64,000 nt of DNA from Phallusia mammillata (Eukaryota), in the NCBI GenBank assembly GCA_965637545.1, contig OZ281494.1, forward strand, positions 12,834,001 through 12,898,000, read 5' to 3'. The translations under genes were made by a program, and so were the position numbers. A model generated the notes under the pieces. It ran no database searches. It was not told the origin of the DNA and was given only the letters and a program-made list of their open reading frames with translations. Below are positions 35,601 through 57,492 of the stretch, one piece after another. Position 1 is the stretch's first letter, and each line of letters opens with the position of its first letter.

Positions 35601-38600
35601 GAACCATTCGTGGCCAAGATATAGAGAATCTACAAAAAGGCACCAACGATTGGATTTAAGATATTCCTTTTGCACAAAGGTAACAAAATAAATATAGTAC
35701 CTATAGTAAGACACCCCAAGATTCTTTAATAACGCTACGTCAGTGTCGATTTTGTTGTAACTGTCACAAGCGACGTCGCCGTTCCTACCATCCTATGAGA
35801 AACCAAAAAAATAATCACCCAATTCACATACCTTTTTACAAGGATTGCCACGATAAAAAGTGTTAAATGTGTATATTCGACTTGTTGGCTAACTGCTGAA
35901 TTGAGTTACTTACAGCAACTAGCCAAGGAGTGTGAGATGTTTTGTCCCAAATTCCAACAGCTTTTCCATCACTTCGCCAACCTCCTTCAATCTGAATAAA
36001 CATTAAATTTATTCTGATTTTGATTAAACCCCAACTCCGGATGTGATATATCAGACTGAAAAGCCGTACTTGATATGATGACGTAGCAACTGCCCAAATA
36101 AAGTCGGAAGGAAATTCTCCTACCAAGCGTTCGTCGCGTTCTAGAGGTGGAAATCCGTTTTCACGAATCACTTGGCTGAAAAACCAATTAAGCAAATCCG
36201 TTAATATCTAACCTTATTTTGCTGGGTTAAGATGTAATGATTTTTCTTCTGATTTTGGCTTACTTGTAATAGATAGATGATCGCCTCGGTGTTCTGGGCC
36301 GCACTGGGTCGTTGAAATCGACGTGGAACAGACCAAACTTTGCGCTGTAACCGAAATTCCATTGAAAGCCGTCCAGAAATGAATAGGCAGAATAACCACG
36401 GACATCAACTCCATCAAGGGTATGTGCTGTAAACAGTATGTTCGAAATTTTAAACAAGGAAAATGTCAATTGAAAATTGTCCACCATAGTAAACTCGCCT
36501 TTCAATGCTTCGTTTATGTTGGATTTGAAGAACATTACTCTTTCTTCGTCGTCCAAAGTTGGGTCGGTACTCCCCACACCGTTTTCCACAATGTATATTG
36601 GAGGGCTTCCATATTCCCTGTCGATCCAGTTTAGTAAACGACGCAAACCCCATGGAACAATTTGCTGCCAAGGTGGATAGGCTGTAGTCGTGCCAGGAAT
36701 CGGGACCTGAGAGTTATCATGGTGTCAGGCCGATTGAAGGCGCCATATCGAACCAACCGGTCACCAAGCATTCACCACCATATGACAAGGCGTATAGGCT
36801 AGAAAAATCTAGTCAGCGGTGGGATTTGAACCCACGACAGGAGTCTTTCCGGGACTGCAGCCTATTGTATTTTCCTTATTAATGCGTAAAAACAAATTAT
36901 ATAACCTAAGCCGCTCCACTATTATTTTGAAGCTACCAAGTTCGTTTCCAACAGGGCCTTAACAATTGTGTGAGCTAATTATAAGTGCCTAGCCTACGTC
37001 GGCGCTGAAAAAACAATGCTTTTAGCGGTTGGTTGTCTTACGGATCAAAATATCAAAACCCACACCTCATTTGTATCTCGGTCATTTTCGTAATTTGGAG
37101 TTGACGAATCTTTCAGCTGATGGTTGACGAGTCGCGAAGTAAAACTTGTTACGCCAAAGAAGTCGTAACTTCCTGCGATTTCTCGCTTTTCAGCTTCGGT
37201 AAACACCGGCAGTCGAGATTCTGGCAGACCTGAGATGCAGAACTTGAGAATGTTTTCTTCTTGATAAAAAAAACTGAAGCACAAGTGACAAACCTTGCAA
37301 GGCGCTCTTGTCTGACACCTGCTTTTTAACGATCTCTGGGTAATTCCCGTTCTTGCAAATCGGATGAGCGAACCAACCGAGACGAGACTTAAACAAAGAC
37401 AATACAAGTTGTTACTTGACTTAAAAAATATGATGCTGCACTATCAATCATACCTGTAGCATTCTATCAGCAGCTGCCACGTCATCTTGACTATTTTGAT
37501 CTTTCGGCTCCGCCCAATCGCTACTCATAGTTATTCCAACTTTTCCAGCTTGCAAATTCTTGTAATCACTCTCGTAAAGTCTATAGGCCCTTGCATGTGC
37601 CCTAATGATGTTGTGGGCACACAGGTACGGTGTCGTACCCGGTGCGTCGGATGTTCCAGGAGCAAAGACGCCCAATCCGTTACTACGCAATCAGGTACAT
37701 AGCAAGAAAAGTTTTGTTTTGTGAATTTGTTCTCTTACTCACCCCAACCAACAAGTCTTGTAAGGTTCATTGAATGTGTTCCAAACCTTAACCCTGTCTC
37801 CGAATGTGTTGAAGCAAAAATCCACATAGTCGACAAAATTTTGAATGGTGTTATCGTTTTGGAAGCCTCCAACGTCTTGCAAGGCCTGTCGAAACGTTAA
37901 ACAACAGCTTAATTTCATCAAGGGTTTAGGTCAGGGGTCGGCAACCATTTACACGACGCGTGCCAATTTGCTTTTTATTTCCATGTGTTAATGACCTCGC
38001 GTGCCAACGTTTTGCTAAATAATAGTACTGCGTGCCAGCAGTTATTAATAGTAAAGAGAAAGCTGAGTGTTTTGTGCATGTAAGGCAAAATTTTAAGGCA
38101 ATGGCATAGTAAAACAAGAAACAAGCAGTGTAACATGTTAAATTGTTACTTCAATACAAACATGCAAATCAGTTGGCGTGCCATGAAAAACCCTCTCGCG
38201 TGCCAATGTTGGCACGCGTGCCAGGGGTTGCCGACCCCTGGTTTAGGTACTATGGATGTGCTAATGTCAAAATCGTCCTAACCAATAATGCTTCGTGCAG
38301 ATCAGTCACAAATATATCGCACTGAAAGCATTAGCTGTAGAACAACGTTTTAGTGTCACAGTAAACGAAAATGTAGGTACAAGACAATGTAGACACGTAT
38401 AACCATCAGAAACCGCCAGTTTTTTCACAGAACAAAAAAATTAAAGCATGTTTAGGATTGACGCATACAAAGTATAAACCTGTGGCAAATCCCAATGGTA
38501 AAGAGTAACTATTGGTTCTATTCCCCGAATAATTAAGGAGTTGATCAATTTGTTGTAATAATCAACACCAGCTTGATTCAGGTTGGCGTTAGTTCCATCA

Positions 38601-41600
38601 GGAAATATTCTGGTCCATGCGATTGAAAAGTGGTAGTGACTCACGCCAAGCATTTTGAGAAGGTTTACATCTTCAGCAATCTGAAAAAAAGAAAACGAAT
38701 CACATTTGTAATCAAACACTCATGACCATGGGATTATGTCACAAATTACTTTGTCGTAGCTATTAGCAGAAACGTCTCCAGTTTGATTTTTGTTGCCGGG
38801 AGTCTGTGAAAATCTGTCCCATATACTTTCACCCTTGCCGTCTTCGTTCCAAGCTCCTTCAATCTAAAACATTTGCCACGGTTTAAATGCCATTTTTCCA
38901 ATAGCCTAACTTTATGTGCTTTGATAGCTGGAATGATTGTTGTCAAGTCGGTTTTACCTGATAAGCTGAGGAAGATACGCTCCAAGTGAAGTCTTCAGGA
39001 AAAGTCCCGTAGTAGAAACGATCTCTTGCGATCGGTAGCACAGCATTAAATTCCTGCGTGCCAATAAATTTATAGTCCAAGTTTGCTTTATATCCAGTCC
39101 ATAACCGCTGCTACTAAGTTATACAAGTTGTTTGTGCACAAATCCAATATCAGAGCAAGAACATAAGATCCAATGCATTAGAATGGTACCTATCATAAGT
39201 ATAACAAACTTCAAACCTTCCAAACTGAGACGCTTGCAGCTGATGGGATGGCCGACGCCTCTAGTTTAGTAAAGCTGAATTCTGATGAGGCAATGCCGTC
39301 CCTTGTTGATGAAGAAGTGGATTGCATTGAATTTGTGGGTGGCTGGTCAGTAACAAATCCGTTTTTGCTTGCCACTCCTTGATAGAAAGTCGCCGAACTT
39401 TTGGGAATTCTTGGTCTAAACGCGAAAACATGCAAAAATTAGAGACTTTCTAGATTTCCACTGTTTTTTTTTTATGTTGTCACTTTGTTTAAAGCAGTTG
39501 TTTATTGACATATATCTATGTCGAGTTACGTTAAACTGAACCAATCACAACATGATATTGAACCTGTCAGGATCGTTGAAGTCAACGTAATGTAAACCAG
39601 CTCTTCTTGTATAACCGTGTTCCCATTCAAAACTGTCAAGTAGCTGGGCATAAAAACCTCCAACAGAAACCGATTCCCGATATTGAGCTGAAAACACGAA
39701 ACGTTTTCTTAGAGTTTGAAAAAGTGCAATGCTTTCAGATAAAACTCGAAGCATGTCTGTAATTCGCTTTGTTCAATCATCTGTAACATATATAATACGA
39801 TTTCCCTTGATTTTGACGAAGGTTCCTTTAGATTTTAAAAAGTTTTAAAACTTGAAATATTTATTAATGCCACGAATCCTGTTCAACTCTTTAGTGATAT
39901 TCACCTTTCAACATTTCATTGATGTAAGACTTGTAATATTCTTTACGGTCCGTATCGTCCAGCATCTCTGTGACGTCATCAGTTGCAAATCCAGAGTCGT
40001 AAACCACGATAGGTGACATCATCGCTGTTGCTGATGACGATGGCAAGACGTAAAAGGCGTTTGCAAGATATAGCAGGCGACGAATTGACCATGGAACTGG
40101 AGCCTGGGCTGGATCAACCCCCGTTTGGGGCCAGCTGGGGTCTTTGGATAAAGCTAAGTCCTGATAAGTTAAAACGAGTTGTTGTTGAAACAGTTAGTAC
40201 ATTGCATTTTTAATATCTTTCAACCGCCCTGCAAAGTTTCTGAATTAATTGTTTGGCCTAACCATGACAAAAAAATAGTTTTGTTCCGAGGTTTTGTGCA
40301 GTTTTGCTTTTGAATAAAAAAAATGCAATACGTTTGTATTTCCAGTTACAAGCAACACAATGAAAAGGACAGACTTTTTCACATTATCTACCTGGTGTGT
40401 CCAGTAGTTTTGTGGTGATACAGCTGAGTTATCTTGGTATGCGACAAGTTGTGCAGTTCCAGGTATTAAGATGAAACAATCGGCAGAACCTTGGATACAA
40501 AACAGGTATTGATTGCTATACATTTTGATACATTACGAAATGGAAATTGTTTTTTTATGAAGAGTACTTCTGAAGGGAACCACACATACGATTGCCGATC
40601 TTCAGATTTTTACAGAGATATTATACCTTTAATTTGAGTTTTTTCTTCAGCTGAAAGCGTTGGAAGGTAGCTGGCTCCCGCAGCTGACTTGCTAGCTACT
40701 TGGTCTTTCATAATCTGTGGGAAATCGCCGTTTATAAATACCGGGTTTGCGAAAAATCCGAGTCGAAATTCCGAAGCTCGAATTGCGGCGTCAACATCTT
40801 GCTGCGAGGTGGCGTCAGCAGGTTCATACCAGTCGGAAGAAAGGGCGATTGATACCTAAAAGAAGACGGCCACTAATGTTGATTTGGGCGAAATGTTAAA
40901 ACCATATACCAATTTTGGGAATAAATTTGGGACCTTACCCTTCCATCTTGTGATGAACGATAGCGGTTGTTGTAAATCTTCCAAGCTGCAGCATGTGCCA
41001 ACAACAAGTTCTTTCCAACTTCATATGTGTCGCTTTCCGGTGAACTGGGCCCTGAAAAAGTCGGTTTAAGGTATAATCCTTACTGTTTTTTCAAAGCCTT
41101 TTTGTAAAACGCACGCTTTATCGGCAGTTAATTTTTACCTGGTGGATGTTTCCCGCTTCCATAACCCTTCCACGCCACTGTATAGGGATCGTACATCGTC
41201 ACCCAGTCCTTTACGCGATCGCCAAATGTGTTGAAGCAAAAGTTGGCATATTGTTCGAACCAGCTTTGAGATTTAAAATTGAGCCAACCTATAACAGAGG
41301 AGCCAATTTGTTGTAAGTTTCAAATTTTTGCACTGTATGTGAACATTTGCTGTAATGTGCGAGAATGACGCTTTTTTGCGTCTGTTTGAGCCAGTATATT
41401 TCTTAATTTGTATTTTACAGGTTTTCCGATGCTTTTGAACCTTACAAGTTTTTTTTTGTTAAATACGACAAAGATTTGCTGCTTTTAGAAGTCCCTCCTA
41501 CATAAAAAAAACACTTGTCTCACCTCCGAGTTCAGCTAACACCAGGGGCATGTCGAAATGGTGCAACGTCACTACGGGGGTGAACCCCCTCGCAATTAGT

Positions 41601-43335
41601 TCATTGATGACGTCATTGTAGTGGTCGACCGCCATTTGATTTGCTTGTTCGGTTCCGTCGACGTTTCCGTTTGGAAAGATGCGTGACCATGACAACGAGA
41701 ATCGATAATGAGAAGTACCGAGACCAGTTAAAAGCTAATAGAAAAATATAACTTATTTGCTTTTTACATTTTTTTGGTATTTGTAAGATTTATATGCAAG
41801 TTTTCTAATACTTTTCGGATTAATTTTAAAATTGTTTGCTTATACAATCTGATCCTGTTTACCTGTGCGTCATATAGAGTTTTAAAGTAGGAATCAGTTG
41901 CCACATTTCCAGTCGACAAGCTGGAATTGTCATCAACTATACTTTCTTGTACGTGATTCGCTTTCATGAAATCTGATACTGGAATCTTTCCTGACGTTTG
42001 TGTGAAGTTATCCCACAAACTTGGACCTAAAAAACAAATGTGCCAAACTTTATCAGAAGCCAAAGTAACCCCGGTATTTGCTATTTCTAAAAGTACTAAA
42101 GTTTTAATGCCAAAAAATATTGCATGTACGAGTTGCTTTACTTTTTCCAAACTTTTTCCATGCTCCTTCAGTCTGATAAGCAGATGACCCAGCTCCCCAC
42201 ACAAACCCATCGTAAAATATTCCCTCAATAAATTCGCTTGTGTCATTGTCGCTTCTGCATGTAAATTATTGCAGTTGTGCACAACAATTTTATATCTTTA
42301 TAATAATGATACCAAAATTGTAACAACATCCAACCGATTTATTACGTCACACCTTGACGTTACAGTTTTTTTTTTAAATGACACTGCGTACAACAGCACG
42401 TCAAATCTACTGGTTATCTGGTCACCAATGTTTTATGCTGAACTTGAAGGTTCTAAATTACTAGAATTAAATATGGTTGGCTGAGCTTTTGTGTGAACAT
42501 TTTGTAAGTGTTGAAAATAGATTGGTTGGACGGCGTCACGGCTGATCTATGAAACAGGTGACACTGATGTCATTATCAGTAGATACCCAAGCAGTAATTA
42601 AAAAATGTATATTCAATAGTATACTCTATTAAAAAATGTCATTATATAACTCTCATCACTCGGCAGATCATTTCGTTGAAAGTTAGGAACAGATTTATAT
42701 GACGCCCCTGGACAATTCGCGTACCTTGACCAAAAATATTGCCAAGGTTCGGTTGTGTTGCGAACTTCAATGGAATCTAAAAACAAATCGTGTTAGGTAG
42801 AGGCTTACAGTTGGTGTTATACATGCCACACACCCTCAAAGAAAAGGTCAGATTTCAATATGCGTGAATTCTAAGATGAAATGGGCCTAATTAAGCCACT
42901 TATACGTTGTGGCCGGTTGCGGTCAGACATACGGTCATAGGCTACTGTTTAAAATAGATTTTATAATGTCAGCATAGCAACCTCGTGAGCGATGTTTATC
43001 AGACACCTGTGTGTAGTTCAAACCCTGCCAAACGCGTTTTATTTCGGTCAAACTCAGTATACCGAGCGATTAAGTTTAATTCAATATAATCTTCTTATCT
43101 TTGTTAGTTTAATGCAGTAAGGCACAGTGTTAAGGTGGAAAAAACATACCAGAAAAAAAGTTGCAAATAGGTTCAAATTCGCTATCTTGATAACATCATT
43201 AAAGTTTAAAAACAGCTTGTTGTGTTTGCAAAGTTTGATTGATGCAAACTCACCTACAACACTGGACCAAACGACAATTTCCACCAGAACCAAAGCCAGA
43301 AAACATTTCAATTGCGATCTACCACCAGCCAACAT
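32631..43335 (-). CDS. LCT: Lactase-phlorizin hydrolase-like protein, copy 1 (three GH1 domains, ~31 exons, ~1650 aa)
   Basis: Signal exon 43254-43335 ([27 protein letters not shown]). Domain 1 ([26 protein letters not shown]), domain 2 ([37 protein letters not shown]), domain 3 ([36 protein letters not shown]). Juxtamembrane [18 protein letters not shown] resembles human LPH. Last exon 32631-32659. No frameshift or premature stop was seen in the exons traced. Confidence 0.92.
34374..34593. mobile_element. Mutator-like (MULE) foldback MITE, 220 bp, in LPH copy 1 intron
   Basis: 90-bp inverted arms 34374-34463 and 34504-34593 (87/90 identical) with a 40-nt spacer. Perfect 9-bp TSD AACGTAACA at 34365-34373 and 34594-34602. 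Termini GG...CC. Confidence 0.9.
36811..36863 (-). pseudogene. tRNA 3'-half-like fragment (tRNA pseudogene or tRNA-derived SINE head)
   Basis: Minus strand reads GGCTGCAGTCCCGGAAAGACTCCTGTC-GTGGG-TTCAAAT-CCCAC-CGCTGAC-T followed by AGATTTTT. It has a perfect T-arm/B-box, a 7-nt acceptor 3' strand and a T5 run. No convincing 5' half. Confidence 0.45.
37932..38240. mobile_element. hAT MITE (Buster/Charlie-type), 309 bp, in LPH copy 1 intron
   Basis: Perfect 15-bp TIRs CAGGGGTCGGCAACC / GGTTGCCGACCCCTG. Perfect TSD GTTTAGGT. Internal CGCGTGCCA repeats. Confidence 0.93.
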
Positions 43336-44172
43336 ATTTGCTGGTAGAAAATCCTGCAATGTATTAACATAAAGTTATAGCAGTAAGAAAAAATATATCA
43401 TGGCGTCGTACTTAAAAATATGAGACTGCTGTACCTAAAGCACTGAATTATATTAGCTAACAAAACTAACCAGTTTCAGAATAAAGTCGTTTTTAATGCT
43501 TGTAAATCCAGTGTTTCTGTAAAACAATTGTAACCGCAACTACACAGAGCTTAAATGCAAACATCAAGTCCAAATAAAGTGGCCTTTATATAAATGCTTG
43601 AATGCAAACAATCTTCACTGAAAGCGTAAATTTTATCATAACCGTTTTATGCAGGAGTTTTGTACTCAAACTTCTTTTCTGGCAAAACCTTTGACGCAGC
43701 ACAATAGCAAAAACAAACTCTTGCCGCAATTAATCATTCCAGCCTCTCTTTATAAAGCATTGCAAACATTTCAGTGTCTCTACTTCGAAATCAAAGTATC
43801 ACATTTAACTCGCTAGTCGGGCACTTGATTGACCCCTACAGTAAAACACAGCCTAAAACTTTAAAATGCTTCGCGGGCCGCAGAAAAAATATTGGAGTGC
43901 TGCGTGTTTAAAACCTTAAAACTGGGCACAAGAAACGTTTTTGCATAGATTGTTAAGTCTGAAATTGTATTCACATTTAACAGAAGCTCAAGAACTAATA
44001 AGACGAAGGCGTCACGTGATTTTTCGTATTGCATCTTTATTGCAGGGTTGACAGCAAAGGTTCACTCTATCTAATCCCTTCGGTAGGGCTCTTTTATCCT
44101 ATTGCAAACGTCTGTGAAGTACTCTTCTATAAGATATCTTTTTCTCTGCTTTCTTTTTTTCTCGGCTTGCAT

Positions 44173-44236
44173 CGTTCCCAAAGCGTGTTTAACTTAGCGC
44201 GTTTAACTTTTGCCGTTCCCAAAGCGTGTTTAACTT
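44173..44236. repeat. Short tandem duplication
   Basis: CGTTCCCAAAGCGTGTTTAACTT at 44173 and 44214, with a partial copy (GCGCGTTTAACTT) between. Confidence 0.8.
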
Positions 44237-45871
44237 TACTTCACCTTTTTGTGGCTGCGGAACACTGGGCCACCGGCAGCCTATTTAAGTTTGTTGATTA
44301 CAGAGATGATTTTATTGCAAAACGGCGCCGGCAGCCATTCTCAGGAAAATCGTGTTGCAGCCATATGCTGCGTATAGTTGTTGTATTTTATTCAACGAAA
44401 AAAATCGTTTCGCGCAAAATCCGCTTAAACCGGTTTGCAACCTGCAGGGATGAAACACACTCTTGCTTGAACCCAACGGGCAATTGACCGGCGTTGCTTT
44501 CGAGTTTTTTACGCTTTTTTGGGGGGTTAACCCGTGGTCGCGTTCGAAGATGAAATTTACTTCTAAGTTATACGTTGTTACAAACAGAAAAAAAGTGTCA
44601 AGACGTTCCGTGTTGGTGACGTTATTAGCAAAACGTTACTAGCATGTGTACTTGATATTCTGAGCAAATTCTGAGCGTCAAACGTTACCCCTTGGGGATT
44701 ACATCTACCCCCCAGTTGAGAACCTCATTCCACTTCAAGTTGTTTTGATAGGAGGTGTTACAAAATACCATTGCAACAGAAAAATGATATTAAACATTTA
44801 TATTTTTATGAGGCCTGATTTAAGAGTGCTGCACAAATGCCGGGAACACCATAATACCTGTAAACTTGTGTTATAAATATTCAAGACCTTCCCAACGCAG
44901 CAAAACTTTTAGCTCCCATTCAAGAAGATACTAATCCCCTTTATCGATTCGGGTTCCCATAAGATGCGATTTAATTTAAGATTACAATCAAACGCCGCAA
45001 ATACCGCCCTTGGCTGCCGAAAAGCACAAAAAATGCGGGTTGGCTATCTAGAAACTCAAAAAGGCAAACCTTCGCTGAGGGTGCACTTTACACGAACTTT
45101 TTTTTGAGCAATCGTTTTGACATTTTGCCGTTGGCAGTTCGTGCAGTGCAACTATGTTTTTTAACCATGTCTTAAACTCTTGCCACTTATCTCTACAAGG
45201 ATGAAAAATGACCTTACCGTATATTTATTTCTTGCAGCTTGCTAGCATGCATAAACAATTTTCTATGCATTGGCAGAGGTATTGCGTTTTTTCTATGTTC
45301 AATATTTTAAAGCAAGAAAAACTTTTGTGGCTTTAATTGTCGATTAAGTTGGTTGTTAATCAAAATGCGCCCGAACATCCTATTTTCATTCCCGCAGCAC
45401 GAATGTATTTTACAGGTCACGTATTTTACAGGATCCGTCAACAATCAACAACAAACTGAAGGTCATCCCTTCCGCCCGGGTAATTAATCGTTGCGTTCAA
45501 TACGTGGTTGTCAGCACATCGTACACGAAAATATTTTCAGTCAAACGATTTCAAGTAATGGCCTTTGAAATCATTACACAATCCAAAACAGTAAAATACG
45601 CACAAAACCATGGAATTGAATGACATGGATAACAGCTGATTGTATTGTGACTAAATACTATCTTGAAAGAAATATATTTAAATAATATCTTTAATTTTTT
45701 TAAGAATGAAAGAATGTTTAAATAGTTGGCTTATATACCATCTGGTGTATAACATAATCACATCAAATCTGAAATCTGCAAGTCTAAAATTTATTGTTTG
45801 AAACTTTTACACAATGACCATCAGCAAATGTTTGACAAATCATGATTTCTTGTTCATTGCAGATTCGTGAA

Positions 45872-48800
45872 CTATCCAAAAATCGGGCTCCAATAAAATA
45901 CTGTAAATAAAAAAGGTTATTAGGTTTGCAACGTTGAAAGTTCATCAGAAAGTACATATTGACGCAGTAAACTTACCAGCAACGGAGGTTGTTACGAAAA
46001 ACGCAATAGATGTTGCTAAAAGAACATGCAGTGCCGTTTGAGAATCCTCTTTATTCAAAACCACGCCCAAAAAATTTACTTTTTTGGTACGATCTTCTAC
46101 TGGGGATGTCACGTTAGGATAGCTCATGCAGGCAGGCAATCCTTCCGCTGGGTAGGACTGGCTAATAATTTCCTTTAGACAGAGAGTCGACTGTTTTGGT
46201 ATCCGGGGTCTTTTCGGGTCACTGAAGTTGACCCAGTGTAACCCGAATCGCTGGGTGTAACCCTCTGCCCACTCAAAATTGTCCATCAAAGACCACGCTG
46301 TGTAGCCGGTGACGTTTACACCGTCAAGTTTGATAGCTAAAAAACATCAAGTTATTAGATGTACTGGTGAGATAAAAACTGAAACGTTTTGCGTAGTTTC
46401 TAACGCGCTAAATCTATAAAATTAAATCTTTATACTCATCATTGTCATCAATGTCACTAAGAACTCTACAGGAATACTTTTATTCAAACCTTGTTTTCTG
46501 ACTAAGCAAGGATTTAGGTATATTGCCTATTATTTTATATAATAAACTTTTGAACCTTTGAGCACTTCGTTGATGTAGCCATGATAAAAATCTTTTCTCC
46601 AATAGTCATTAAGTTCCACGGATGAACCTTCTTCGGAGAATCCGTTTTCAGTGATAAGAATTGGAGGATCGCCATATTGATCCTTGATCCAAGACAGAAG
46701 ACGACGGACGCCCCATGGAACCTAAATAAAATTCGCGTAATTTGGAATCGGTTAATGTCACACTCAAGAGCTGATTAAGCCAAAAAATCTACAATCACTT
46801 ACGTCCTTAAGCCAAGATGAAGCTGACTGTGGCCACGTGGTGTCCTTAACAGCTCCCGCCTCTGGATCTTCAAAATATCCCACAGAATTTATTGAGGATG
46901 GATCAAACGAATCAAACGCCAGGTTTGTTGTGTAATGGTTGAATCCGAAGAAATCTGCACTTCCCTTAATGAGGATTTTCTCTTCTTCGGTAAACTTCGG
47001 AAGCCGGGATTCTGGTTCGCCTTGGGCGGCGCTTCTTGCATCCACGTATTCCTGTATAATACTTCAGTTTCGTAGGGGCTGCTCCAAAAAACGCAATCTA
47101 TACACAAACTATGACCAACAATGAACTAAGCTACAATAATAAAATCAGACTTCATGTAAACGCAATCTATTCCAACCTACTGTAGCATGTCATTCATCCG
47201 CTTTCTGCTATGAAATACGCAATTTACTATTCTACAGTATTTGCGTATTTCGCACTTTTTGTGGCAAATAATATTGACTGGAATAAATGACGTTTGCATA
47301 AAGCTTGGGCACTGTATTGATTGCGCATTATATTTTAACTTAATTACATTGTTTGAATAATACATTTTAGTTATATATTAAGACTTTTTTTAGTCAAAAA
47401 GGCAGGTACAAAGCATTTCTTGTTCTAGTTATGTATTGCATATTTTAGAGTAGCCCGTTTCAAACTGTGTTCGTTTTTACTTTCATAACATCTGGGTAAT
47501 CCCCATTGACAAAGATCGGATGAGCCCACCACCCTAAGAAGAATTGCAAAACGCGATCGCTGGCATCGTGATCGGTTTCGCGAAACATGTTTCTAGCCTC
47601 ATGCCAGTCGCAGTTGCAAGTGATAGCGACTTCTCCTTGTTGTTCAGCTGCATATTTTGCGTGATACAATCTGGAAGAAAACATATTGGATTGTCAGAAG
47701 TTTTATGAGCCAAAGAGTGATGTTTTATTGAACTGTTGGCAACGTGTGTTGGGTGTGGGTAAAGCGTGAAACCGGAAAGTGGGCTAAGAAACTAAGAGAA
47801 GTCGAAAAATTGTGTTTGCTTTGACACTTGAACATCGGTAAATCTATAAAATCAAATGTTTCTGAAGGTTTTTTTAAGGTTTGGTTTGGGTGACCGCTAA
47901 GTAGTTTTAAGAGACCGCAAGTGTTTCATCTAAATACCAAAAACTGTAGTTGTAGTTGCAAGTCCAAATTTTGGGAAAACGCTGGAGAAATTTGGGGGAC
48001 CGTTTCGGTCCCCCAAAACACCTTAAAAAAACATTGTTTCTGCGTATATACCACTTTTTAAACAACGTCAATTCATTTTGCTACATTTTTGTAACATTGC
48101 GTATAACATAGTAATTTAACTTTTACCGGTAAGCCTTGGCATGAGCTAACAGGACATTGTGCCCAGCTTTGTAGTCAGAACGACCAGAATCTCTGAGATT
48201 TGGCGAATGAACTGCAACAGAATATCCGAGCACGGTGAATACCCAAGGTTCGTTGAATGTGATCCATTTCTTCACTTTAGATCCGAATGCGTTAAAACAA
48301 GCATCAGCATAATCCACAAACAAATCGATTATCTGGCTGTTAGGCCAACCACCGAATGTGTCCTATAAAGATTACAACAGCTAATTCATTTAAACATTCT
48401 GTGGTGGTTTTTGTTACATCTTATTTGCCAGTAATTGCCGATTTCTATAGATTCCCGCATTTCCTTAGTACAACTTGTGTTGTAACCTAGTGCGTTGTGT
48501 GACGTAACAATGGACTGCCAGTTTTGTGTGATAACGCAACGTGGTTTAGTTCTTTTCGTTGCTGACTTCCGTGGAGCACGGTGTTGCGTCGGTTGTTGTA
48601 GAAAAGCTGTTTATTGTCGTGTTGACGATTATTGGTGAGTCACTTTGTATATATATATGTGTTTAATGACTCAATATTGTGAATTACCATAATGAATGCT
48701 AACCGCTGGAAACTTGGCCAAAACTGCAATGACCTAAAATGTAATTTCCCTTTTTTAATAGTCGTACTGTACGTGTAGTTGGGTTCATTCAAGTTGCTAA

Positions 48801-51800
48801 AGTTGTAATTGTTTACGCAGCGTTCTTGTACGATACTCACGTGAAGCGTGACTTTCTACACTGTTGCTCTACATAGCTTGGTAAGGATTGTGTATGACGT
48901 CATAATGGCATATTGTGGTCTCATGTTTTATTGTGTATTTAGGTGTGTGATAGTGATTTCTGGGATCGCCCATGTTATTTGTTTTCTTCCGGTTCCCATA
49001 ACAGTTGGTGAGCTTAAAGTTACATTCCTACATTTTAAGCGCAGTGCTAATGCCATGTCTTTGTAGAAACCGTTTCCTATTCGTTTCTATCGCCTCCCAC
49101 CGTCCTCTTCATTCTTCATTGAAAGTGTTTGAATATAAGATCTACAAAACACCCTATCTGTGTGGACTGCGTGTTGGAGACCTTTAGGAATCGCGTTTCA
49201 ATCCCCCCCTCGTGTGACGTTCCGCGCTGTAACCGGGGCGCGTTCACGGGACGTTACAGTTTTAAACCAATTTGTATAATTTTTGAAGACATACGGCATT
49301 GCACATGTGTTTTGGTTTGAATGGTATTATTGACAAGTTTAACAAAATCCGACCTGGTACACCAAGGGCAGATCCCAATGATAAAGAGTGACCATTGGTT
49401 TGATGTTGGCAGCGAGAAGAGCGTCAATTAAACGATTGTAGTAATCCACAGCGGCAGGGTTGATTCCATCCGATACGTTACCGGTGGGAACCATTCGCGG
49501 CCAAGATAGAGAGAATCTAAAAGAAGAAAATAATCATTCTTTGAAATCAACCTCTAACAATTCCAATTCAGGATTGCTACTTAAAGTTATACAATAAATA
49601 AATCTACCTGTAATATGACACACCAAGGCTCTTTAATAGCGCCACGTCAGTGTCAATTTTGTTGTAACTGTCACAAGCGACGTCACCGTTTCGTCCATCC
49701 TAAATCAAAACAGACAGCATTGTTTACAAAAATCTATTCACATTACAAGGATTGCAATAGCTTGCAAGTTTTTTGATGTAAAGGCGACTTTTTAGTTTGC
49801 TAACAGACATCGCTTACAGCAACCAGTCCCGGAGTGTGAGATGTTTTGTCCCAAATTCCAACAGCTTTTCCATCACTTCGCCAACCTCCTTCAATCTGAG
49901 TAACGTTTATTGAAATATATTTCAGTAATGATTTTATTTAACTATCCAATTAGTTTTTATTCTTAACAAATCCGATTAAACCTCTGTCCGAACTAGAAAC
50001 ATGTGTTTATACACTAGACCAGTGGTTCCCAACGAGGGCCCATGGCCCCCCAGGGGTGCCACGAGCTGTGTTTCGGGGGGCCACGGGCGTAGATTCACAA
50101 GAAACACCCACTAAACGTCACTTTTACTTTTACTTTATTTCCAAATTTAATCGACTATTTCACGTACTATTTGTTTATAGTGAGGTTTATCACGCTCATT
50201 TACTCTATTAGACTAATTGTTTAGGGCCAAAATTAATACCGCATTCCAACGCGAGATTGCTATCTAACTTAAATTTTAGGGGGGCCACAGGTCCTACATG
50301 ATAACTTGAAGGGGGCCACGAGGCCAAAAAGTTACTTTAAGGGGGCCATGGTCCACGAAAGGTTGTGAACCACTGCACTAGACTTTCTATGCGAACGTAC
50401 TTGGTATGATGACGTAGCAACTGCCCAAATAAAGTCGGGAGGGAATTCCCCTACCAAACGTTCGTCGCGCTCCAAAGGAGGAAATCCGTTTTCTCGAATC
50501 ACTTGGCTAGAAAAAAAGAGTCCAACAATAAAGCAAAGAGCGTTTTTTTTTCTTGTCGCTTTCCACAGGATTATTATTCAAGGCAAACTGATTCGCTTAC
50601 TTGTAAAAGATAGATGATCGCCTCGGTGTTCTTGGTCGTGCTGGGTCGTTGAAATCAACACGGAACAAACCATACTTTGCGCTGTAACCTACATTCCATT
50701 CAAACGTGTCCAAAAATGACAGGGCAGAATAACCACGGACATCAACTCCGTCAAGGGTGTGAGCTGTAAACATTCAGAAGTGCTAAATCATAATCTCAGA
50801 AGGTTAAAAGTTGTAATATAAGTTTGGGTCCACCATATTCAACCCACCTTTCAAAGCTTCGTTGATGTTGGATTTAAAGAACATTACTCTTTCTTCGTCG
50901 TCCAAAGTTGGGTCGGTACTTCCCACGCCGTTTTCCATAATGTATATAGGAGGGCTTCCATATTCCCTGTCGATCCAGTTTAGTAAACGACGCAAACCCC
51001 ATGGAACAATTTGCTGCCAAGAGGGATAGGCTGTTGTGGTGCCAGGAATCGGGACCTGAGAAATATTAATGTGCTTCAAATTAAAGATTGACGGCATTTG
51101 CGACTGAAAAATACTTTTTTTAAAAGACTTTTCATGTTTGTTACTATTACTAGCTGTATCAGTATTTTCACGGCATCTGACACAATTCACAATTAACGCC
51201 TTGTAAAAAATGCCCACACAGGTTTTGCTTTATCGTTTGCAGCTTGAACTACAATGTTTTGGCGGTCTGTGGTTTTACAGATTTGCAGATTACTGAAACC
51301 CAAACCTCATTTGTATCTCGGTCATTTTTGTAGTTTGGAGTTGATGAATCTTCTAGCTGATGATTAACGAGTCGCGAAGTGTAACTTGTTACGCCAAAAA
51401 AGTCGTAACTTCCCCGAATTTCTCGCTTTTCAGCTTCGGTGAAAACCGGCAATCGAGATTGGGCCAAACCTAAAACGTACAGAGATTAGCAAATGTTTTT
51501 TGACATAAAACTAAAGCATATGTGGCAAACCTTGCAAGGCGCTCTTGTCTGACACCTGCTTTTTAACAATCTCAGGGTAATCTCCGTTCTTGCAAATCGG
51601 ATGAGCGAACCAGCCAAGACGAGACTTCAATCAAGAAGAGAGTTTTATTTTATTCGGTCACAAAAATATGAATATTCCCCATACAACACTTGTTTTTAAG
51701 TTGAACCGTATGTACTGAAATATTATGTTTTTATTTTCTGACTTTAATGACATTAAAAATCAGAGTTACTAACTATTTTCTGCATTTCACTGTAGTCAAT

Positions 51801-54800
51801 CATACCTGTAGCATTCTATCAGCAGCTGCCACATCATCTTGACTATTTTGGTCTTTAGGTTCGGCCCAATCGCTACTCATAGTTATTCCAACTTTTCCAG
51901 CTTGCAAATTCTTGTAATCACTCTCGTAAAGTCTATAGGCCCTTGCATGTGCCCTAATGATGCTGTGGGCACACAGGTACGGTGTCGTACCCGGTGCGTC
52001 GGATGTTCCAGGAGCAAAGACGCCCACTCCGTTACTGCGCAATCAAGCACATTGCAAATAGAGTTTCATACACAGACGTTTTGTTACTCACCCAAACCAA
52101 CAAGTCATGTAAGGTTCGTTGAACGTGATCCAAACCTTAACCCTGTCTCCGAATGTGTTAAAGCAAAAGTCCGCGTAGTTTACAAAATGTTGAATGATGC
52201 TGTCGTTTTGGAAACTTCCAACGTCTTGCAAGGTCTGCCAAAAAAAAAACAATTCATAAAGGATTCTAGTAATTAAACTAAAGTTCTTTGGGTAAAGTTT
52301 AAAATGTGTTTTGTTTGCCGTATGTGAGGTACAAACCTGTGGCAAATCCCAATGATAAAGTGTAACTATTGGTTCGATTCCCCGATTAATTAAAGAGTTG
52401 ATCAGTTGGTTGTAATAATCAACACCAGCTTGGTTCAGATTGGCGTTAGTTCCATCAGGAAATATTCTGGTCCATGCGATTGAAAACCGATAGTGACTCA
52501 CGCCAAGCATTTTAAGAAGGTTTACATCTTCAGCAATCTGAATAAAAAACGAATTATGTCGGAACTTTGTGACAATAAATGATAAACACCGTTAAAATTA
52601 CTTTGTGGTAGCTATCAGCAGCAACGTCTCCAGTTTGGTTTGTAAAAATGTTGCCCGGAGTGTGTACAAATCTGTCCCATATACTTTCACCCTTGCCGTC
52701 TGCGTTCCAAGCTCCTTCGATCTAAAACATTCATTAGGAACAAATTGTGACGAGTTTTCGTTTGAAAAAATAGTTAAGCTAGTTCACCTGATAAGCTGAG
52801 GAAGATACACTCCAGGTGAAGTCTTCAGGAAAAGTCCCGTAGTAGAACCGATCTCTTGCGATTGGTAGCACAGCATTAAATTCCTGCGTGTCAATATATT
52901 TTGTAATAAGCGTAGCAGTTCTGTTTTCTTGTTAACTATACGTTCCTTGTAACTATGGGTAAGTTTTAGCAATACTGTTGTATATGGCGAAAACCAAAAT
53001 TTTAGGTTCAAATCTTATTGACGTCATTTTTCAAGTAACTTATATGGATAACAAATTTCAAACCTTCCAAACAGAAATGCTTGCGGTAGATGGGATGGTC
53101 GACGCCTCTAGTTTAGTGAAGCTGGATCCCGATGAGGCAACGAGATTTCTTTGTGATGAAGGTGTGGGTTGCATTGACGGCTGGCCAGTTACAAATCCGT
53201 TTCTGCTTACCACACCTTGGTAGAATGTCGCTGAACTTTTGGGAGTTCTCGGTCTAAACGTAAAACAATGCAAATAAAATAAAATAACTTTTTCTAGATT
53301 TTCGCAGTTCATTATGTTGGAATTTTGCTTTTATTTTTTCAAGGTAGTTGTTTACTAACTATATCTGTGTCGAAATACGTTAAACTTGGCCAATGACAAC
53401 ATTATAAATTATTGCACCTGTCAGGATCGTTGAAGTCAACGTAATGTAAACCAGCTCTTCTGGTATAACCGTGTTCCCATTCAAAACTGTCCAGCAGCTG
53501 GGCATAAAAACCTCCAACAGAAACAGATTCCCGATATTGAGCTGAAAACAGAAACATGTTTTGGTAAAATTGGAAAGCTCTATTATTTCATTCACAATAA
53601 AGCGTGCCCGTAACTCCATTTGTATGATGTCTATTATATGATCTCGGTGTAAAAGCAGGTTCCTTTATAAAGTTTCAAAGCTGGAAAGATTTTCCTTATG
53701 GGTTGAATATTAACTCAACTTAACAAACCCGCCAAATTTAGCATAGACCTTATCCAATTTTTTAGTGCAGTAGTTCTCAAACTGTGCGTCGTGACGCCCT
53801 GGTGCGTCGTTTCAATTTTCCAAGGGCGTCGCAGAATAGTTCCGTTTCGTGGCTTTTGGTGGTTGTATCAATAAACACAACTTTCATAATCAGTTTCCTC
53901 ATTAACTTTTATTTGCTGGTGCGTCGCAAGACCAGAAAACTTTTCCAGAGGCGCCGCAAGAAAAAAAGTTTGAGAACCACTGGTTTAGTGATATAAACAA
54001 CTTACCCTTCAACATTTCGTTTAAATACGACTTGTAATACTCCTTGCGATCCCTATCGTCAACCAGTTGCGTGACGTCATCGGTTGCGAACCCGGGATCG
54101 TACACTACGATAGATGACATCATCACGGTCGGTGATGACGATGGCAAGACGTAAAAAGCGTTTGTGAGATAAAGCAGGCGACGAATTGACCAAGAAACCG
54201 GGGCCTTCGTTGGGTCAACTCCCTTTAGGGGCCAACTGGGGTCTTTGGACAAAGCTACGTCCTGATAAGTAAAAAATAAAGTGATGCTGAAAAAGGGGTC
54301 TTGCGTTTTATTAATGTATTTGAACTGCCTACAAAGTTTCCTACCTGGTGTGTCAAATAGTGTTGTGGTAATGCTGAGTTATTGTGGTATGCGACAAGTT
54401 GTGCAGTGCCAGGTATTAGGATGAAGTAATCGGCAGAACCTTGGATACAAAACCATGTGTTGGTTGCGGTATAGTTGGATGTTTAGAAGGAAACAATTTT
54501 TCTAGAAGAATTTATCTAACGATGGTTTACAACTAGGAGCCAAGAAAAAAGAATTGGTATTTTACAGTCACTCATACATATATTTGCATTTTTACCTTTA
54601 ATTCGAGTTTTTTCATCTACGGAAAGCGTTGGAAGGTAGCTGGCTCCCGGAGCTGACTTGCTAGCTACTTGGTCTTTCATAATCTGTGGGAAATCGCCGT
54701 TTACGAATACCGGGTTTGCGAAAAATCCGAGTCGAAATTCCAAAGCTCGAATTGCCGCGTCAACGTCCTGCTGTGAGGTGGCGTCAGCAGGTTCATACCA

Positions 54801-57492
54801 GTCGGAAGAAAGGGCGATTGATACCTTAAAGAAGTAATACTCATAAGATAGGCAAAATTCTAAAACCTAGTATACTTTGTGGCCTTGTGCTGAAATATAA
54901 ATTGCCTCACTTACTCTTCCAGCTTGTGATGAACGATAGCGGTTGTTGTAAATCTGCCAAGCTGCAGAGTGCGCTAATAACAAGTTCTTTCCAACTTTAT
55001 ATGTGTCGCTTTCCGGTGAATTCGAGCCTTGAAAGAGTCGAATTAATCCCGTTTTAAAAAGTTTTTTGTAAGGATACATTTTAAATGCAAGTTTGTTTCG
55101 GCAATTAACGCTGTGTTACCTGGTGGATGTTTCCCGCTTCCATAACCCTTCCACGCCACTGTATAGGGATCGTGAATCGTCACCCAGTCCTTTACGCGAT
55201 CGCCAAATGTGTTGAAGCAAAAGTTGGCATATTGCTCGAACCAGCTTCGAGATTTAGAATTGAGCCAACCTGAAAAACGACTATTTCGTCATTGTTTGTT
55301 GTAAATTGTCATTGTTTTTGTTATTCTTTTTTGTTGTAAAGTTATACTATTTAGATACTGCCTTATCTGTAAATTTGGCTTATTTTGAACTTTGAAATCT
55401 CCGCGCTTATAAGCACTGTCGTAACACTCTGAAAAAATGATAAAAAACAATTCGACTCACCTCTGAGTTCAGCTAACACCAAGGGCATGTCGAAATGGTA
55501 CAACGTCACTACGGGGGTAAACCCCCTCGAAATAAGTTTATTGATGACGTCATTGTAGTGGTCGACCGCCATTTGATTTGCTTGTTCGGTTCCGTCGACG
55601 TTTCCGTTTGGAAAGATGCGTGACCATGACAACGAGAATCGATAATGAGAAGTACCGAGACCCGCTAAAAGCTAAAGTAAAAGTGTATTAAGGTGCATGC
55701 GGATTTCGGCTCCTAATGTGCAGATCTAATCCATTCGTTACCTTAAATAAGAAAAATAGGTATGTTATTTGATTTGTTTTACATTATTTGTTTATGAGAT
55801 TCAATTGTTCTTGTCGCTTATACTTCTATTTCGTCTCCTGTGCGTCATATAAATTTACTAATTAGAAATTGTTCTGCGCTTTGGCGTTTAATCAGGATAT
55901 TTCATAACTAGTGGTATTTAGCTAGTGACAAGTTTTTAATAAAAAACAAATATGACATTTACCTGTGCGTCATATAAAGTCTTAAAGTAGGAATCTGTTG
56001 CCACATTTCCAGTCGACAAGCTGGAATTGTCATCAACTATACTTTCTTGTACGTGATTCGCTTTCATGAAATCTGATACTGGAATCGTTCCTGACGTTTG
56101 TGTGAAGTTATCCCACAAACTTGGACCTGAAAAACAAATGGGCATTTGTCACATACCATTTCGTTGATTCGGTGAAAATTAAATTGCGTATACGAGTTGC
56201 TTTACCTTTTCCAAACTTTTTCCATGCTCCTTCAGTCTGATAAGCAGATGACCCAGCTCCCCACACAAATCCATCATCAAATGTTCCTTCAATAAAGTCG
56301 TTCGTGTCATTGTTGCTTCTGTAAACAACACAAAATTATGACGCACATTAATCTCAATTACCAGTACCTAACAAGTCTGGTTGAGGAGTAAACGTGCTTG
56401 GTCGACCCTTGATGAACTTTAATTTGGGGTTCGGCAACCTTAAACACGCCGCCTGCCAAACTGCTTGTTACGTGATAATGACGCGTGCAAGGAGTCACTG
56501 ATCCCTGCTGCAATGGTATTGTTTTACGAATGTCGCCAGCGTTGTAAATAACCGGCAATTTTTAACATGTTATAATGCCATTTTGACTTGATTTAACGAA
56601 TAAAGATGTACTAATACAGAAATTGTCCTGATCCACGGGTGCTTAACATACGATTCTAGTTATATACATTGACATTACTTAGCTGACAAATTCAGTCCAC
56701 CCAAATCAGTCTGTGTATTTTTGATTGCAAACCACTGCGGATATCGACTTCGCCCGAAAATATGGCACTACATTTCTAAACAAGAAATAAATCACGATAT
56801 AAAATGTAAATAATAAATCCGCAGTGGTTTGCAATAAGAAATACACAGAATGGTTTGAGTGTGCTGAGTTTGTCAGCTAAATAATGTTGCTTTAACGAAG
56901 TCATATGCGGAACTTTATAAAGGCATGTCGCCACTGTACAATACCTTGACCAGAAATATTGCCAAGGTTCCGTTGTGTCGCGAACTTGGCTCGATTCTAA
57001 AAACATGTTGAGTTATGTCGGATTTTGTAGCTGTGGTTAACCATGCCATTTAAATAGAACTACTCGTGTAAGACAAAGTGTTCGTTATAGACACGTTTTT
57101 TCTCTAAAAGGATTTAATGAAGATTATCAGCAATGCAAATTGGCGGCTGATGCCCTTTCGACAGTTGTGTAGTTCAAAACCGGTCAAACTTGTTATGCAT
57201 CCAACTATTAAACTGCTTGTGTTTGCAAACCTCTAATGCAGCAAAATACAGTGTTAAAAGAGTTCATACAATACAGGAATTATGTTTTTACGTTAAGTTT
57301 TACGTTAATTTTAAAATATTTTGAGGTATACCAGTGCAGATGGAACACTTTAATAACGAAGCGAGGGATTAACGTTGTTTTTGCTACAAATATCGTTCAT
57401 TCAAACTTACCGACAGCATTTGACCAAACGACAATTTCCACCAGAACCAAAGACAGGAAACATTTCAATTCTGACCCACCACCAGCCAGCAT
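45872..57492 (-). CDS. LCT: Lactase-phlorizin hydrolase-like protein, copy 2 (tandem paralog, same exon structure)
   Basis: Signal exon 57411-57492 ([27 protein letters not shown]). Domain 1 WVTIHDP and IVVYDPG; domain 2 WITFNEP and IYIMENG; domain 3 [14 protein letters not shown] and [10 protein letters not shown]. Last exon 45872-45900. Exon boundaries match copy 1 wherever checked. Confidence 0.92.
48481..49258 (-). mobile_element. Probable solo LTR (Gypsy-like), ~778 bp, in LPH copy 2 intron
   Basis: On the minus strand it begins TGTAACGTCCCG and ends CTAGGTTACA (TGTAAC...GTTACA inverted termini). A TATA run is followed ~40 nt later by AATAAA near the 3' end. Flanks GTGT/GTTT could be a 4-bp TSD with one mismatch. 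The equivalent intron in copy 1 is only ~115 nt. Confidence 0.55.
50020..50375. mobile_element. hAT MITE (Buster/Charlie-type), 356 bp, in LPH copy 2 intron
   Basis: TIRs CAGTGGTTCCCAAC / GTTGTGAACCACTG (13/14). Perfect TSD CACTAGAC. Internal GGGGGCCA repeats. Confidence 0.92.
53768..53982. mobile_element. hAT MITE (Buster/Charlie-type), 215 bp, in LPH copy 2 intron
   Basis: TIRs CAGTAGTTCTCAAACT / AGTTTGAGAACCACTG (15/16). TSD TTTTAGTG / GTTTAGTG (7/8). Internal G(T/G)CGTCGC repeats. Confidence 0.88.
56672..56887. repeat. Degenerate inverted repeat (old MITE-like hairpin) in LPH copy 2 intron
   Basis: Arms 56672-56742 and 56817-56887 (~70 bp, ~85% identical, e.g. TTAGCTGACAAA...CTGTGTATTT...ATTGCAAACCACTGCGGAT). 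TSD not resolved. Confidence 0.75.

What the first reader, a model, noticed from the sequence alone, without database searches (positions are those of the whole stretch)
39560..55174. GH1 domain 1 has both catalytic glutamates replaced by aspartate in both paralogs
Seen: acid/base NEP becomes YDP (41185-41193) or HDP (55166-55174). Nucleophile TENG becomes YDSG (39990-40001) or YDPG (54091-54102). In addition GxNxY becomes ILIPG, the AWS Trp is lost ([11 protein letters not shown]), and a Ser-rich insert precedes the nucleophile strand. Known: Glu-to-Asp at either position cripples retaining GH1 enzymes; Klotho and LPH pro-domains are pseudo-enzymes that lose these residues in other ways. Inferred: keeping carboxylates at both sites in both copies points to selection, e.g. 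an intramolecular chaperone, a lectin or co-receptor pocket, or a widened site with different chemistry.
Basis: partly seen in the sequence, partly recalled or inferred. Interest (0 to 1): 0.7.

Follow-up and report, generated by a model that had tools for sequence, protein, structure and literature searches.

The report
Conserved double-aspartate dead GH1 domain
The first of three sugar-cleaving (GH1) domains in two neighbouring sea-squirt lactase-like genes really has both catalytic glutamates replaced by aspartate; related species keep this, but it is a variant of the known inactive leading domains of lactase-type enzymes.

Summary
Two tandem minus-strand genes (A about 32.7-43.3 kb, B about 45.9-57.5 kb) each encode a signal peptide, three GH1 domains and a C-terminal membrane anchor.

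In domain 1 (D1) the acid/base motif NEP reads YDP (A) or HDP (B), and the nucleophile motif TENG reads YDSG (A) or YDPG (B). Domains 2 and 3 keep NEP and ENG. The ILIPG motif, the lost Trp and the Ser-rich insert are also real.

- **Expression:** spliced RNA-derived contigs from three studies give GT-AG junctions for copy B. Its D1 is an intact reading frame joined to domain 2.
- **Selection between copies:** A and B are recent duplicates (dS about 0.25), so "both copies" is not independent evidence. D1 is still under purifying selection (dN/dS 0.19, against 0.15 for D2 and 0.08 for D3).
- **Conservation across species:** orthologous D1 domains on contigs from six other public samples keep Asp wherever the position is covered. 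Four lineages show both sites and two more show the nucleophile only. Both Asp codons (GAT, GAC) occur at each site, while neighbouring pocket residues vary.

Best reading: D1 is a non-catalytic pseudo-glycosidase domain. It is the counterpart of the LPH pro-region and of sea-hare akuBGL GH1D1, which has Asp at the acid/base site and was inactive in assay. Its role is untested. This is a new variant of a known kind, of moderate interest.

The parts
45951..57492 (-). Paralog B, whole gene: signal-peptide exon (ATG 57492-57490, exon low end 57411), D1, D2, D3, membrane anchor, stop
   Evidence: Open segments; spliced contigs; exon joins; D2/D3 cores
53064..56318 (-). Paralog B D1 plus linker, exons 1-10: 56206-56318, 55963-56126, 55461-55671, 55120-55269, 54915-55027, 54596-54824, 54345-54439, 54006-54261, 53418-53541, 53064-53253. 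Upstream exon 0 is 56945-56996.
   Evidence: GT-AG joints in RNA-derived contigs of three studies, absent from the DNA run; intact frame; Pfam PF00232 on exons
55166..55174 (-). B D1 acid/base motif HDP (CAC GAT CCC) in place of NEP
54091..54102 (-). B D1 nucleophile motif YDPG (TAC GAT CCC GGG) in place of TENG
54408..54422 (-). B D1 ILIPG in place of GxNxY; the active-site Tyr becomes Gly in all orthologs
54112..54147 (-). B D1 Ser-rich insert of about 8-9 residues before the nucleophile strand; present in all orthologs except L004/L005
56017..56073 (-). B D1 insert of about 19 residues in the loop after strand 1, carrying a DD-x-SSL motif conserved in all D1 orthologs and absent from the active domains and LPH II compared
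53477..53509 (-). B D1 [11 protein letters not shown]: the Trp of AWS is lost, the Glu and Trp of FEW are kept
32730..43335 (-). Paralog A, whole gene (ATG 43335-43333), same architecture as B
39216..42254 (-). Paralog A D1 plus linker, exons mapped from B: 42142-42254, 41863-42026, 41524-41734, 41139-41288, 40939-41051, 40627-40855, 40392-40489, 39905-40160, 39564-39687, 39216-39415. Exon 0 is 42725-42777.
   Evidence: blastn mapping and a splice-site/frame search give an intact frame. No RNA was laid on this copy.
41185..41193 (-). A D1 acid/base motif YDP (TAC GAT CCC)
39990..40001 (-). A D1 nucleophile motif YDSG (TAC GAC TCT GGA)
50603..52883 (-). Paralog B D2 with canonical FNEPY and IYIMENG
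45951..50502 (-). Paralog B D3 with canonical FNEPW and ILITENG, then a hydrophobic C-terminal anchor and a short tail

Best explanation
D1 is a folded but non-catalytic GH1 (beta/alpha)8 domain at the N-terminus of a lactase-phlorizin-hydrolase-type (LPH-type) membrane glycosidase. It is made on the same polypeptide as two canonical GH1 domains.

It most likely acts as LPH pro-region domains I/II are reported to act, and as proposed for akuBGL GH1D1: as a built-in folding and secretory-pathway helper for the catalytic domains. It may stay attached afterwards.

The Glu-to-Asp changes at both catalytic positions were fixed before the sampled lineages split. So were Tyr-to-Gly in the NxY motif and Ile-to-Thr next to the glycone Gln. 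These changes have been held since by purifying selection as part of a rebuilt barrel centre. They are not there to run retaining hydrolysis.

Shown: the residues, the expression and splicing of copy B, purifying selection, and cross-species conservation. Inferred: loss of activity, the chaperone role, and why the carboxylates are kept.
For: Residues and architecture:
- Residues and alignment.
- Signal peptide, three GH1 domains and an anchor; D2 and D3 keep NEP and ENG.
- In copy B, D1 is spliced in frame to D2 in contigs of three studies.

Selection:
- dN/dS is 0.186 for D1, 0.148 for D2 and 0.077 for D3.
- Asp is at both sites in L004/5, L006/7, L008 and L009, and at the nucleophile site in L001/2 and L003.
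- Both Asp codons occur at each site.
- Of 139 columns invariant in four active domains, 80 are unchanged in D1, 51 vary among D1 domains, and only 8 are fixed to a new residue. Both catalytic Glu and the active-site Tyr are among those 8.

Loss of the canonical pocket:
- Asn of NEP is H or Y; Tyr is Gly; Trp of AWS is lost; Gln is Q or K; His is H or Y.

Known relatives:
- The closest solved relative of the acid/base exon is akuBGL, whose GH1D1 reads IDDP.
- GH1D1 has Asp192/Glu404 8.4 A apart, against 5.1 A in its active domain. It showed no activity and is proposed to be a chaperone (PMC10619976).
- The LPH profragment is described as an intramolecular chaperone (PMC6412902).
- The linker after D1 matches the bird LPH II-III linker.
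Against: - No activity, folding or processing data exist for this protein, so the chaperone role rests on analogy.
- A scaffold does not need carboxylates. The extra dead domain (D2') of sister species has lost both, and bird LPH domain II has lost the nucleophile, yet these domains persist. The strict retention of Asp/Asp in D1 therefore hints at a more specific role.
- D1 also carries its own conserved loop inserts near the former pocket.
- About 38% of all D1 columns are invariant. Two invariant sites are not statistically striking on their own.
- The nucleophile position of D2' is also fixed (Ala in three lineages), so barrel-centre positions evolve slowly in any case.
- No structure model could be made.
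Confidence: 0.55

Rival explanations
1. D1 is a ligand-binding pseudo-glycosidase module that acts as a lectin, substrate-holding or partner-binding pocket, in the way Klotho proteins use dead GH1 pockets. The two Asp, the kept Glu and Trp of FEW, and the lineage-specific loop inserts would form the binding site.
For: - The Asp/Asp/Gly/Thr centre and the FEW Glu and Trp are invariant while other pocket residues vary.
- The nucleophile-site Asp is invariant inside an otherwise variable strand.
- There is a conserved DD-x-SSL loop insert.
- Other dead GH1 domains drop the carboxylates, so keeping them is not a fold requirement.
- The acid/base exon strongly resembles beta-Klotho KL1, IHNPY-VAW-GYG.
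- In the shipworm multi-domain GH1, the inactive domains stay in the mature enzyme and substrate interaction was suggested (PMC5840672).
Against: - Several canonical glycone-binding positions are not conserved among D1 orthologs (Q/K, H/Y, N to H/Y, Trp lost), which argues against a conserved sugar-binding pocket of the usual kind.
- There are no binding data and no structure.
Confidence: 0.25
2. D1 is still an enzyme. A widened Asp/Asp site would carry out different chemistry, such as an inverting-type or water-mediated mechanism, or act on a different substrate.
For: Both carboxylates are retained and constrained. Shorter side chains and Tyr-to-Gly would enlarge the centre (inference).
Against: - The Asn of NEP, the catalytic-site Tyr and the AWS Trp are gone, and the Gln and His vary.
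- akuBGL GH1D1, which has Asp at only the acid/base site, was inactive on a standard substrate, with carboxylates 8.4 A apart.
- From general GH1 knowledge, Glu-to-Asp at either site reduces the rate by orders of magnitude.
Confidence: 0.08
3. D1 is a decaying relic, and the Asp residues are chance survivors.
For: The nucleophile exon is so divergent that it gives no PDB hit alone and falls below the Pfam cut-off.
Against: - Both copies have an intact frame, and copy B is spliced into mRNA.
- dN/dS is 0.19.
- Exon structure and many D1-specific motifs are conserved across lineages about 0.8-0.9 substitutions per site apart.
Confidence: 0.03

Closest known systems
Pro-region (domains I and II) of vertebrate lactase-phlorizin hydrolase (LPH)
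   Same: - Both are N-terminal non-catalytic GH1 domains ahead of two active GH1 domains, with a signal peptide and a C-terminal anchor.
- The linker after D1 resembles the LPH II-III linker.
- Bird LPH domain I has Asp at the acid/base site, and domain II has His in place of the Asn of NEP, as copy B does.
- The LPH profragment is described as an intramolecular chaperone (PMC6412902).
   Different: - Phallusia has one dead domain, not two. Sister species have a second one.
- LPH domain II keeps the acid/base Glu and has Gly at the nucleophile, whereas D1 has Asp at both sites.
- Whether D1 is cleaved off is unknown.
- The tree does not resolve which LPH domain is the ortholog of D1.
GH1D1 of Aplysia kurodai beta-glucosidase akuBGL (PDB 8IN1)
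   Same: - It is the best solved-structure match of the acid/base exon, and it has Asp at the acid/base position, IDDPFSVAYKG.
- It is an N-terminal inactive GH1 domain before an active one.
- It lacks the glycone-binding and catalysis-related residues, was found inactive, and is proposed to be a chaperone.
   Different: - akuBGL GH1D1 keeps the nucleophile Glu404.
- The protein is soluble with two domains and no anchor.
- It is from a mollusc.
Klotho and beta-Klotho KL1/KL2 pseudo-glycosidase domains
   Same: They are dead GH1 domains in a type I membrane protein. The beta-Klotho KL1 acid/base stretch IHNPYLVAWHGYG is very close to D1's [13 protein letters not shown].
   Different: Each Klotho domain has lost one carboxylate outright, and Klotho has no active domain. 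Here two canonical catalytic domains follow D1. FGF co-receptor function is not testable here.
Inactive domains of molluscan multi-domain GH1 enzymes (CjCEL1A, LpMDGH1)
   Same: They are tandem GH1 domains, some of which lack NE and TENG, and they are suggested to help folding or substrate interaction.
   Different: They are secreted without an anchor, and the domain numbers differ. The residues at their dead sites were not examined here.

Membership tests
Glycoside hydrolase family 1 fold (Pfam PF00232) | Significant, colinear match to the GH1 profile over the whole domain | tested here: met
   D1 exons match profile positions 3-29, 66-129, 133-181, 216-283 and 395-431 above the cut-off. The nucleophile exon matches 321-391 weakly, at 18.4 bits for copy A and with no hit for copy B. 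Solved GH1 structures also match.
Active retaining GH1 beta-glycosidase | Acid/base Glu in the NEP motif | tested here: not met
   YDP in A and HDP in B; Asp in all orthologs that cover the site
Active retaining GH1 beta-glycosidase | Nucleophile Glu in the (I/V)TENG motif | tested here: not met
   YDSG in A and YDPG in B; Asp in all eight orthologous exons
Active retaining GH1 beta-glycosidase | Glycone-pocket residues Gln, His, Asn, Tyr, Trp and Glu-Trp | tested here: not met
   Asn is H or Y, Tyr is Gly, and the Trp of AWS is lost. Gln and His are kept in Phallusia but are K and Y in some orthologs. The Glu and Trp of FEW are kept.
LPH-type multi-domain membrane glycosidase | Signal peptide, tandem GH1 domains, C-terminal single-pass anchor | tested here: met
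   The N-terminal exon has a hydrophobic leader, followed by three GH1 domains and a hydrophobic C-terminal stretch. Leader and anchor were judged by eye, not by a predictor. There are three domains, not four.
LPH-type multi-domain membrane glycosidase | The two C-terminal domains are catalytically competent | tested here: met
   D2 has FNEPY plus IYI(V/M)ENG. D3 has FNEPW plus ILITENG. This holds in both copies. It is sequence evidence only.
LPH pro-region (intramolecular chaperone) | N-terminal non-catalytic GH1 domain(s) preceding the active domains | tested here: met
LPH pro-region (intramolecular chaperone) | Needed for folding and ER exit, and proteolytically removed during maturation | not testable with these tools
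   No furin-type motif was seen in the linker. A single Arg lies upstream of the conserved linker motif in both copies. That is not evidence of cleavage.
LPH pro-region (intramolecular chaperone) | Orthology of D1 to LPH domain I or domain II | tested here: inconclusive
   The D1 clade has 99/100 support, but relations between domain types are unresolved and LPH I sits on a very long branch. Exon-level scores slightly favour domain II.
Klotho family | Two GH1-like domains, each lacking one catalytic Glu, and no active domain | tested here: not met
   There are three domains, and two have a full catalytic set

The most novel reading that the evidence does not exclude
The rebuilt D1 centre is a working ligand-binding, ion-binding or re-tooled catalytic site fused to two live glycosidases. 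That centre consists of invariant Asp/Asp/Gly/Thr, the kept Glu and Trp, and conserved lineage-specific loop inserts. On this reading D1 is a Klotho-like pseudo-glycosidase pocket with its own function, not only a folding helper.
Probability: 0.25. Interest if true: 0.65.

Novelty: new variant of a known kind. Interest (0 to 1): 0.4.

Why it matters
Dead GH1 domains recur in animal lactase-type and Klotho proteins, yet what their former active sites do is mostly unknown. This domain kept a carboxylate pair, shortened by one carbon at each site, across deep divergence, while the rest of the sugar pocket drifted. It also sits next to sister dead domains that lost the carboxylates entirely.

That gives a natural contrast for asking whether such pockets are only structural or have a second function. 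It also shows that the LPH-type layout of a dead leading domain, active domains and a membrane anchor predates vertebrates. The practical value is modest, because the general phenomenon is already described.

Tried and rejected
- **Nucleophile exon against solved structures:** the single sequence gave no hit. A profile of eight orthologous exons was needed.
- **HMMER search of 1.84 billion representatives with the nucleophile exon:** it returned only exon-size fragments and one bird LPH. No full-length relative could be used by reference.
- **Profile of LPH II plus exon fragments for a word search:** MAFFT scattered the fragments, so alignment A2 is unusable and the search was not run.
- **Automatic junction finder for D2 and D3:** it gave unreliable joints. 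Conservative exon cores were used for dN/dS instead.
- **Tree of domain types:** it did not resolve whether D1 corresponds to LPH domain I or II.
- **Taxonomic names of loci L001-L009:** They are called orthologs on exon structure and 40-65% identity. That they are tunicates is an inference.
- **Rfam scan of the high-copy intron repeat:** nothing found.
- **Literature search for ascidian LPH or Klotho GH1 pseudoenzymes:** nothing relevant.
- **Rejected explanations:** assembly or sequencing error (RNA contigs agree), a pseudogene, and misalignment of the catalytic positions.
Full report
**What is there**

The stretch holds two tandem genes on the minus strand: paralog A (about 32,730-43,335) and paralog B (about 45,951-57,492). 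Open segments and homology show the same layout in each:
- an N-terminal exon with a start codon and a hydrophobic leader;
- three GH1 domains, D1 to D3;
- a hydrophobic C-terminal stretch and a short tail.

I did not test this.

**Check of the observation**

Translation of the cited coordinates gives the following:

| Motif | Paralog A | Paralog B |
|---|---|---|
| Acid/base | VTMYDPY | VTIHDPY |
| Nucleophile | VVYDSG | VVYDPG |

- The acid/base exon aligns without gaps to many solved GH1 chains. The Asp sits on the Glu of NEP.
- The nucleophile exon alone finds no solved structure.
- BLASTP against a bird LPH places the nucleophile-site Asp on the nucleophile position of domain II.
- A profile of eight orthologous exons aligns to termite beta-glucosidase with the Asp on the Glu of ITENG, after a 9-residue insert.
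- In ortholog L004, which lacks the insert, the spacing is exactly canonical.
- The other three claims hold in the multiple alignment. GxNxY reads ILIPG, so the active-site Tyr is Gly. The Trp of AWS is lost. A Ser-rich insert is present.
- D1 exons match Pfam PF00232 colinearly from profile position 3 to 431. The nucleophile exon is the weakest part.
- D2 (FNEPY, IYI-V/M-ENG) and D3 (FNEPW, ILITENG) are canonical in both copies.

**Expression and gene model**

Contigs from runs of three studies hold about a third of the words of the 4.1-kb D1 region of copy B. When laid on it they show ten joints, all with GT..AG ends on the minus strand. None of these joints is present in a DNA run of the same organism.

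- The joined exons give an uninterrupted frame of about 566 residues.
- The contigs continue upstream into the leader exon and downstream into the first D2 exon.
- No sequence differences are listed at the Asp codons.

So D1 is the first domain of the protein and is made on one transcript with D2.

Copy A was modelled by mapping the B exons. All splice sites and the frame are conserved.

**Selection between the two copies**

Nei-Gojobori estimates between A and B are as follows:

| Region | dN/dS | Codons | Note |
|---|---|---|---|
| D1, GH1 part | 0.186 | 485 | dS 0.24 |
| D2 | 0.148 | 457 | exon cores |
| D3 | 0.077 | 461 | exon cores |
| D1-D2 linker | 0.29 | 57 | |
| C-terminal tail | 0.26 | 72 | |

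D1 is therefore under purifying selection of the same order as a catalytic domain. With about 90% amino-acid identity, the two copies are recent duplicates. Their agreement at the Asp sites is not independent evidence.

**Orthologs**

An HMMER search of 1.84 billion representative proteins with the B nucleophile exon returned only ten hits. Six were exon-size fragments and one was a bird LPH.

The contigs that encode the fragments (L001-L009, from six public samples) carry D1 with the same exon structure at 40-65% identity.

| Lineage | Acid/base | Nucleophile |
|---|---|---|
| L004/5 | IHDP | ISDEG |
| L006/7 | IYDP | IGDPG |
| L008 | IYDP | IGDAG |
| L009 | IYDP | IGDDG |
| L001/2 | not covered | VHDPG |
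| L003 | not covered | VGDDG |

- Both GAT and GAC occur at each Asp site. At the nucleophile site they differ even between A and B.
- In a tree the D1 domains form one clade (support 99/100), with about 0.8-0.9 substitutions per site between Phallusia and the others.
- I could not name the species. That they are tunicates is an inference.

**How special is the Asp pair?**

About 38% of D1 columns are invariant, so two invariant sites are not remarkable by count alone. The pattern is more informative:
- Of 139 columns that are invariant in four active domains (Phallusia D2 and D3, bird LPH III and IV), 80 are unchanged in all D1 domains and 51 vary among D1 domains.
- Only 8 are fixed to a new residue: Ile to Thr next to the glycone Gln, Asp to Asn, Tyr to His, Glu to Asp (acid/base), His to Lys, Phe to Leu, Tyr to Gly (active-site Tyr), and Glu to Asp (nucleophile).
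- Four of these eight lie in the catalytic-centre motifs.
- Other former pocket positions drift: Gln is Q or K; His is H or Y; the Trp of HWD is F or Y; the Asn of NEP is H or Y; the Asn of ENG is P, S, E, A or D; the Trp of AWS is Q, P or N; Arg is R, K or Q.
- The nucleophile-site Asp is invariant within an otherwise variable strand.
- D1 also has two conserved inserts of its own: one of about 19 residues after strand 1 with a DD-x-SSL motif, and the Ser-rich one.

Two cautions apply:
- The extra dead domain found only in the other species (D2') reads ITIANP or ITIASP, and IITANG, ILISASG or LLIAASG. It has lost both carboxylates, yet its nucleophile position is also fixed, as Ala. Barrel-centre positions therefore evolve slowly in any case.
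- The same comparison shows that carboxylates are not required for such a domain to persist.

**Comparison with known systems**

- The best solved match of the acid/base exon is akuBGL of the sea hare, whose first domain reads IDDP. Next comes beta-Klotho KL1, which reads IHNP.
- The akuBGL paper reports Asp192 and Glu404 8.4 A apart in GH1D1, against 5.1 A in the active domain. It also reports loss of the glycone-binding and catalysis-related residues, no activity of recombinant GH1D1, and a proposed chaperone role. It cites similar inactive domains in CjCEL1A and LpMDGH1.
- In the bird LPH, domain I reads FSDLP, and domain II reads FHEPW with IAGNG.
- The linker after Phallusia D1 resembles the linker between LPH domains II and III.
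- The LPH profragment is described as an intramolecular chaperone that is later removed.
- Phallusia has three domains, whereas the other sampled species have D1, D2' and then active domains, closer to the four-domain LPH layout.

**Interpretation**

The most likely reading is a non-catalytic GH1 domain that helps the two downstream catalytic domains fold and travel, as in LPH and as proposed for akuBGL. The Asp pair would be kept as part of a rebuilt barrel centre (confidence about 0.55).

| Rival reading | Confidence | Comment |
|---|---|---|
| Binding pocket in the manner of Klotho | about 0.25 | Open; gains from the specific retention of Asp/Asp and the conserved inserts |
| New catalytic chemistry | about 0.08 | Unlikely given the lost Asn, Tyr and Trp |
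| Decaying relic | about 0.03 | Contradicted by the data |

Loss of activity and the chaperone role are inferences. The residues, the splicing of copy B, selection and conservation are shown.

**Novelty**

Inactive leading GH1 domains are known, including one with Asp at the acid/base site. A conserved double-Asp state in an LPH-type protein outside vertebrates was not found in the literature searched. I rate it a new variant of a known kind, with interest 0.4.

Noticed in passing
L004:3600-7300, L006:11600-18200, L009:11150-17000: In the other species a second dead GH1 domain (D2') follows D1. Its acid/base motif is ITIANP or ITIASP and its nucleophile motif is IITANG, ILISASG or LLIAASG. Phallusia lacks this domain in both copies, although the linker after its D1 resembles the linker that follows D2' elsewhere. 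This suggests a domain loss in the Phallusia lineage.
   Followed up: partly
window 53685-53960 (intron between B D1 exons 9 and 8): A stretch of about 270 bases has a summed word depth of about 70,000-120,000 in a DNA run, against about 110 around it, and it also appears in RNA-derived contigs. It is a very high-copy repeat. Rfam gave no match over 53500-54050.
   Followed up: partly
window 36263-36420 (paralog A D2) versus 50603-50764 (paralog B D2): In D2 the NFEW-type motif reads DGFQW in A but DTFEW in B, so a glycone-binding Glu is Gln in one copy only. D2 also has a higher dN/dS than D3. This is the subject of another first-reader note (s1-399189).
   Followed up: no
L004:411-551, L006:2525-3361, L009:1860-4268: In three other species the last exons of another LPH-like gene lie just upstream of D1. 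The tandem arrangement of LPH-like genes is therefore not peculiar to Phallusia.
   Followed up: no
window 42142 versus 56206 (last base of D1 exon 1): The last exon base before the donor site is A in copy A and G in copy B, which turns Gly into Ser at the split codon. The donor GT is kept. Splicing of copy A was not checked with reads.
   Followed up: no
window 53064-53253 and 39216-39415: The linker motif after D1, of the form L-x-AS-x-IPS-x-AS-x-SVW, is recognisably conserved with the bird LPH II-III linker, near which the reviewed literature places the mature LPH N-terminus. A single Arg lies about a dozen residues upstream in both copies.
   Followed up: no
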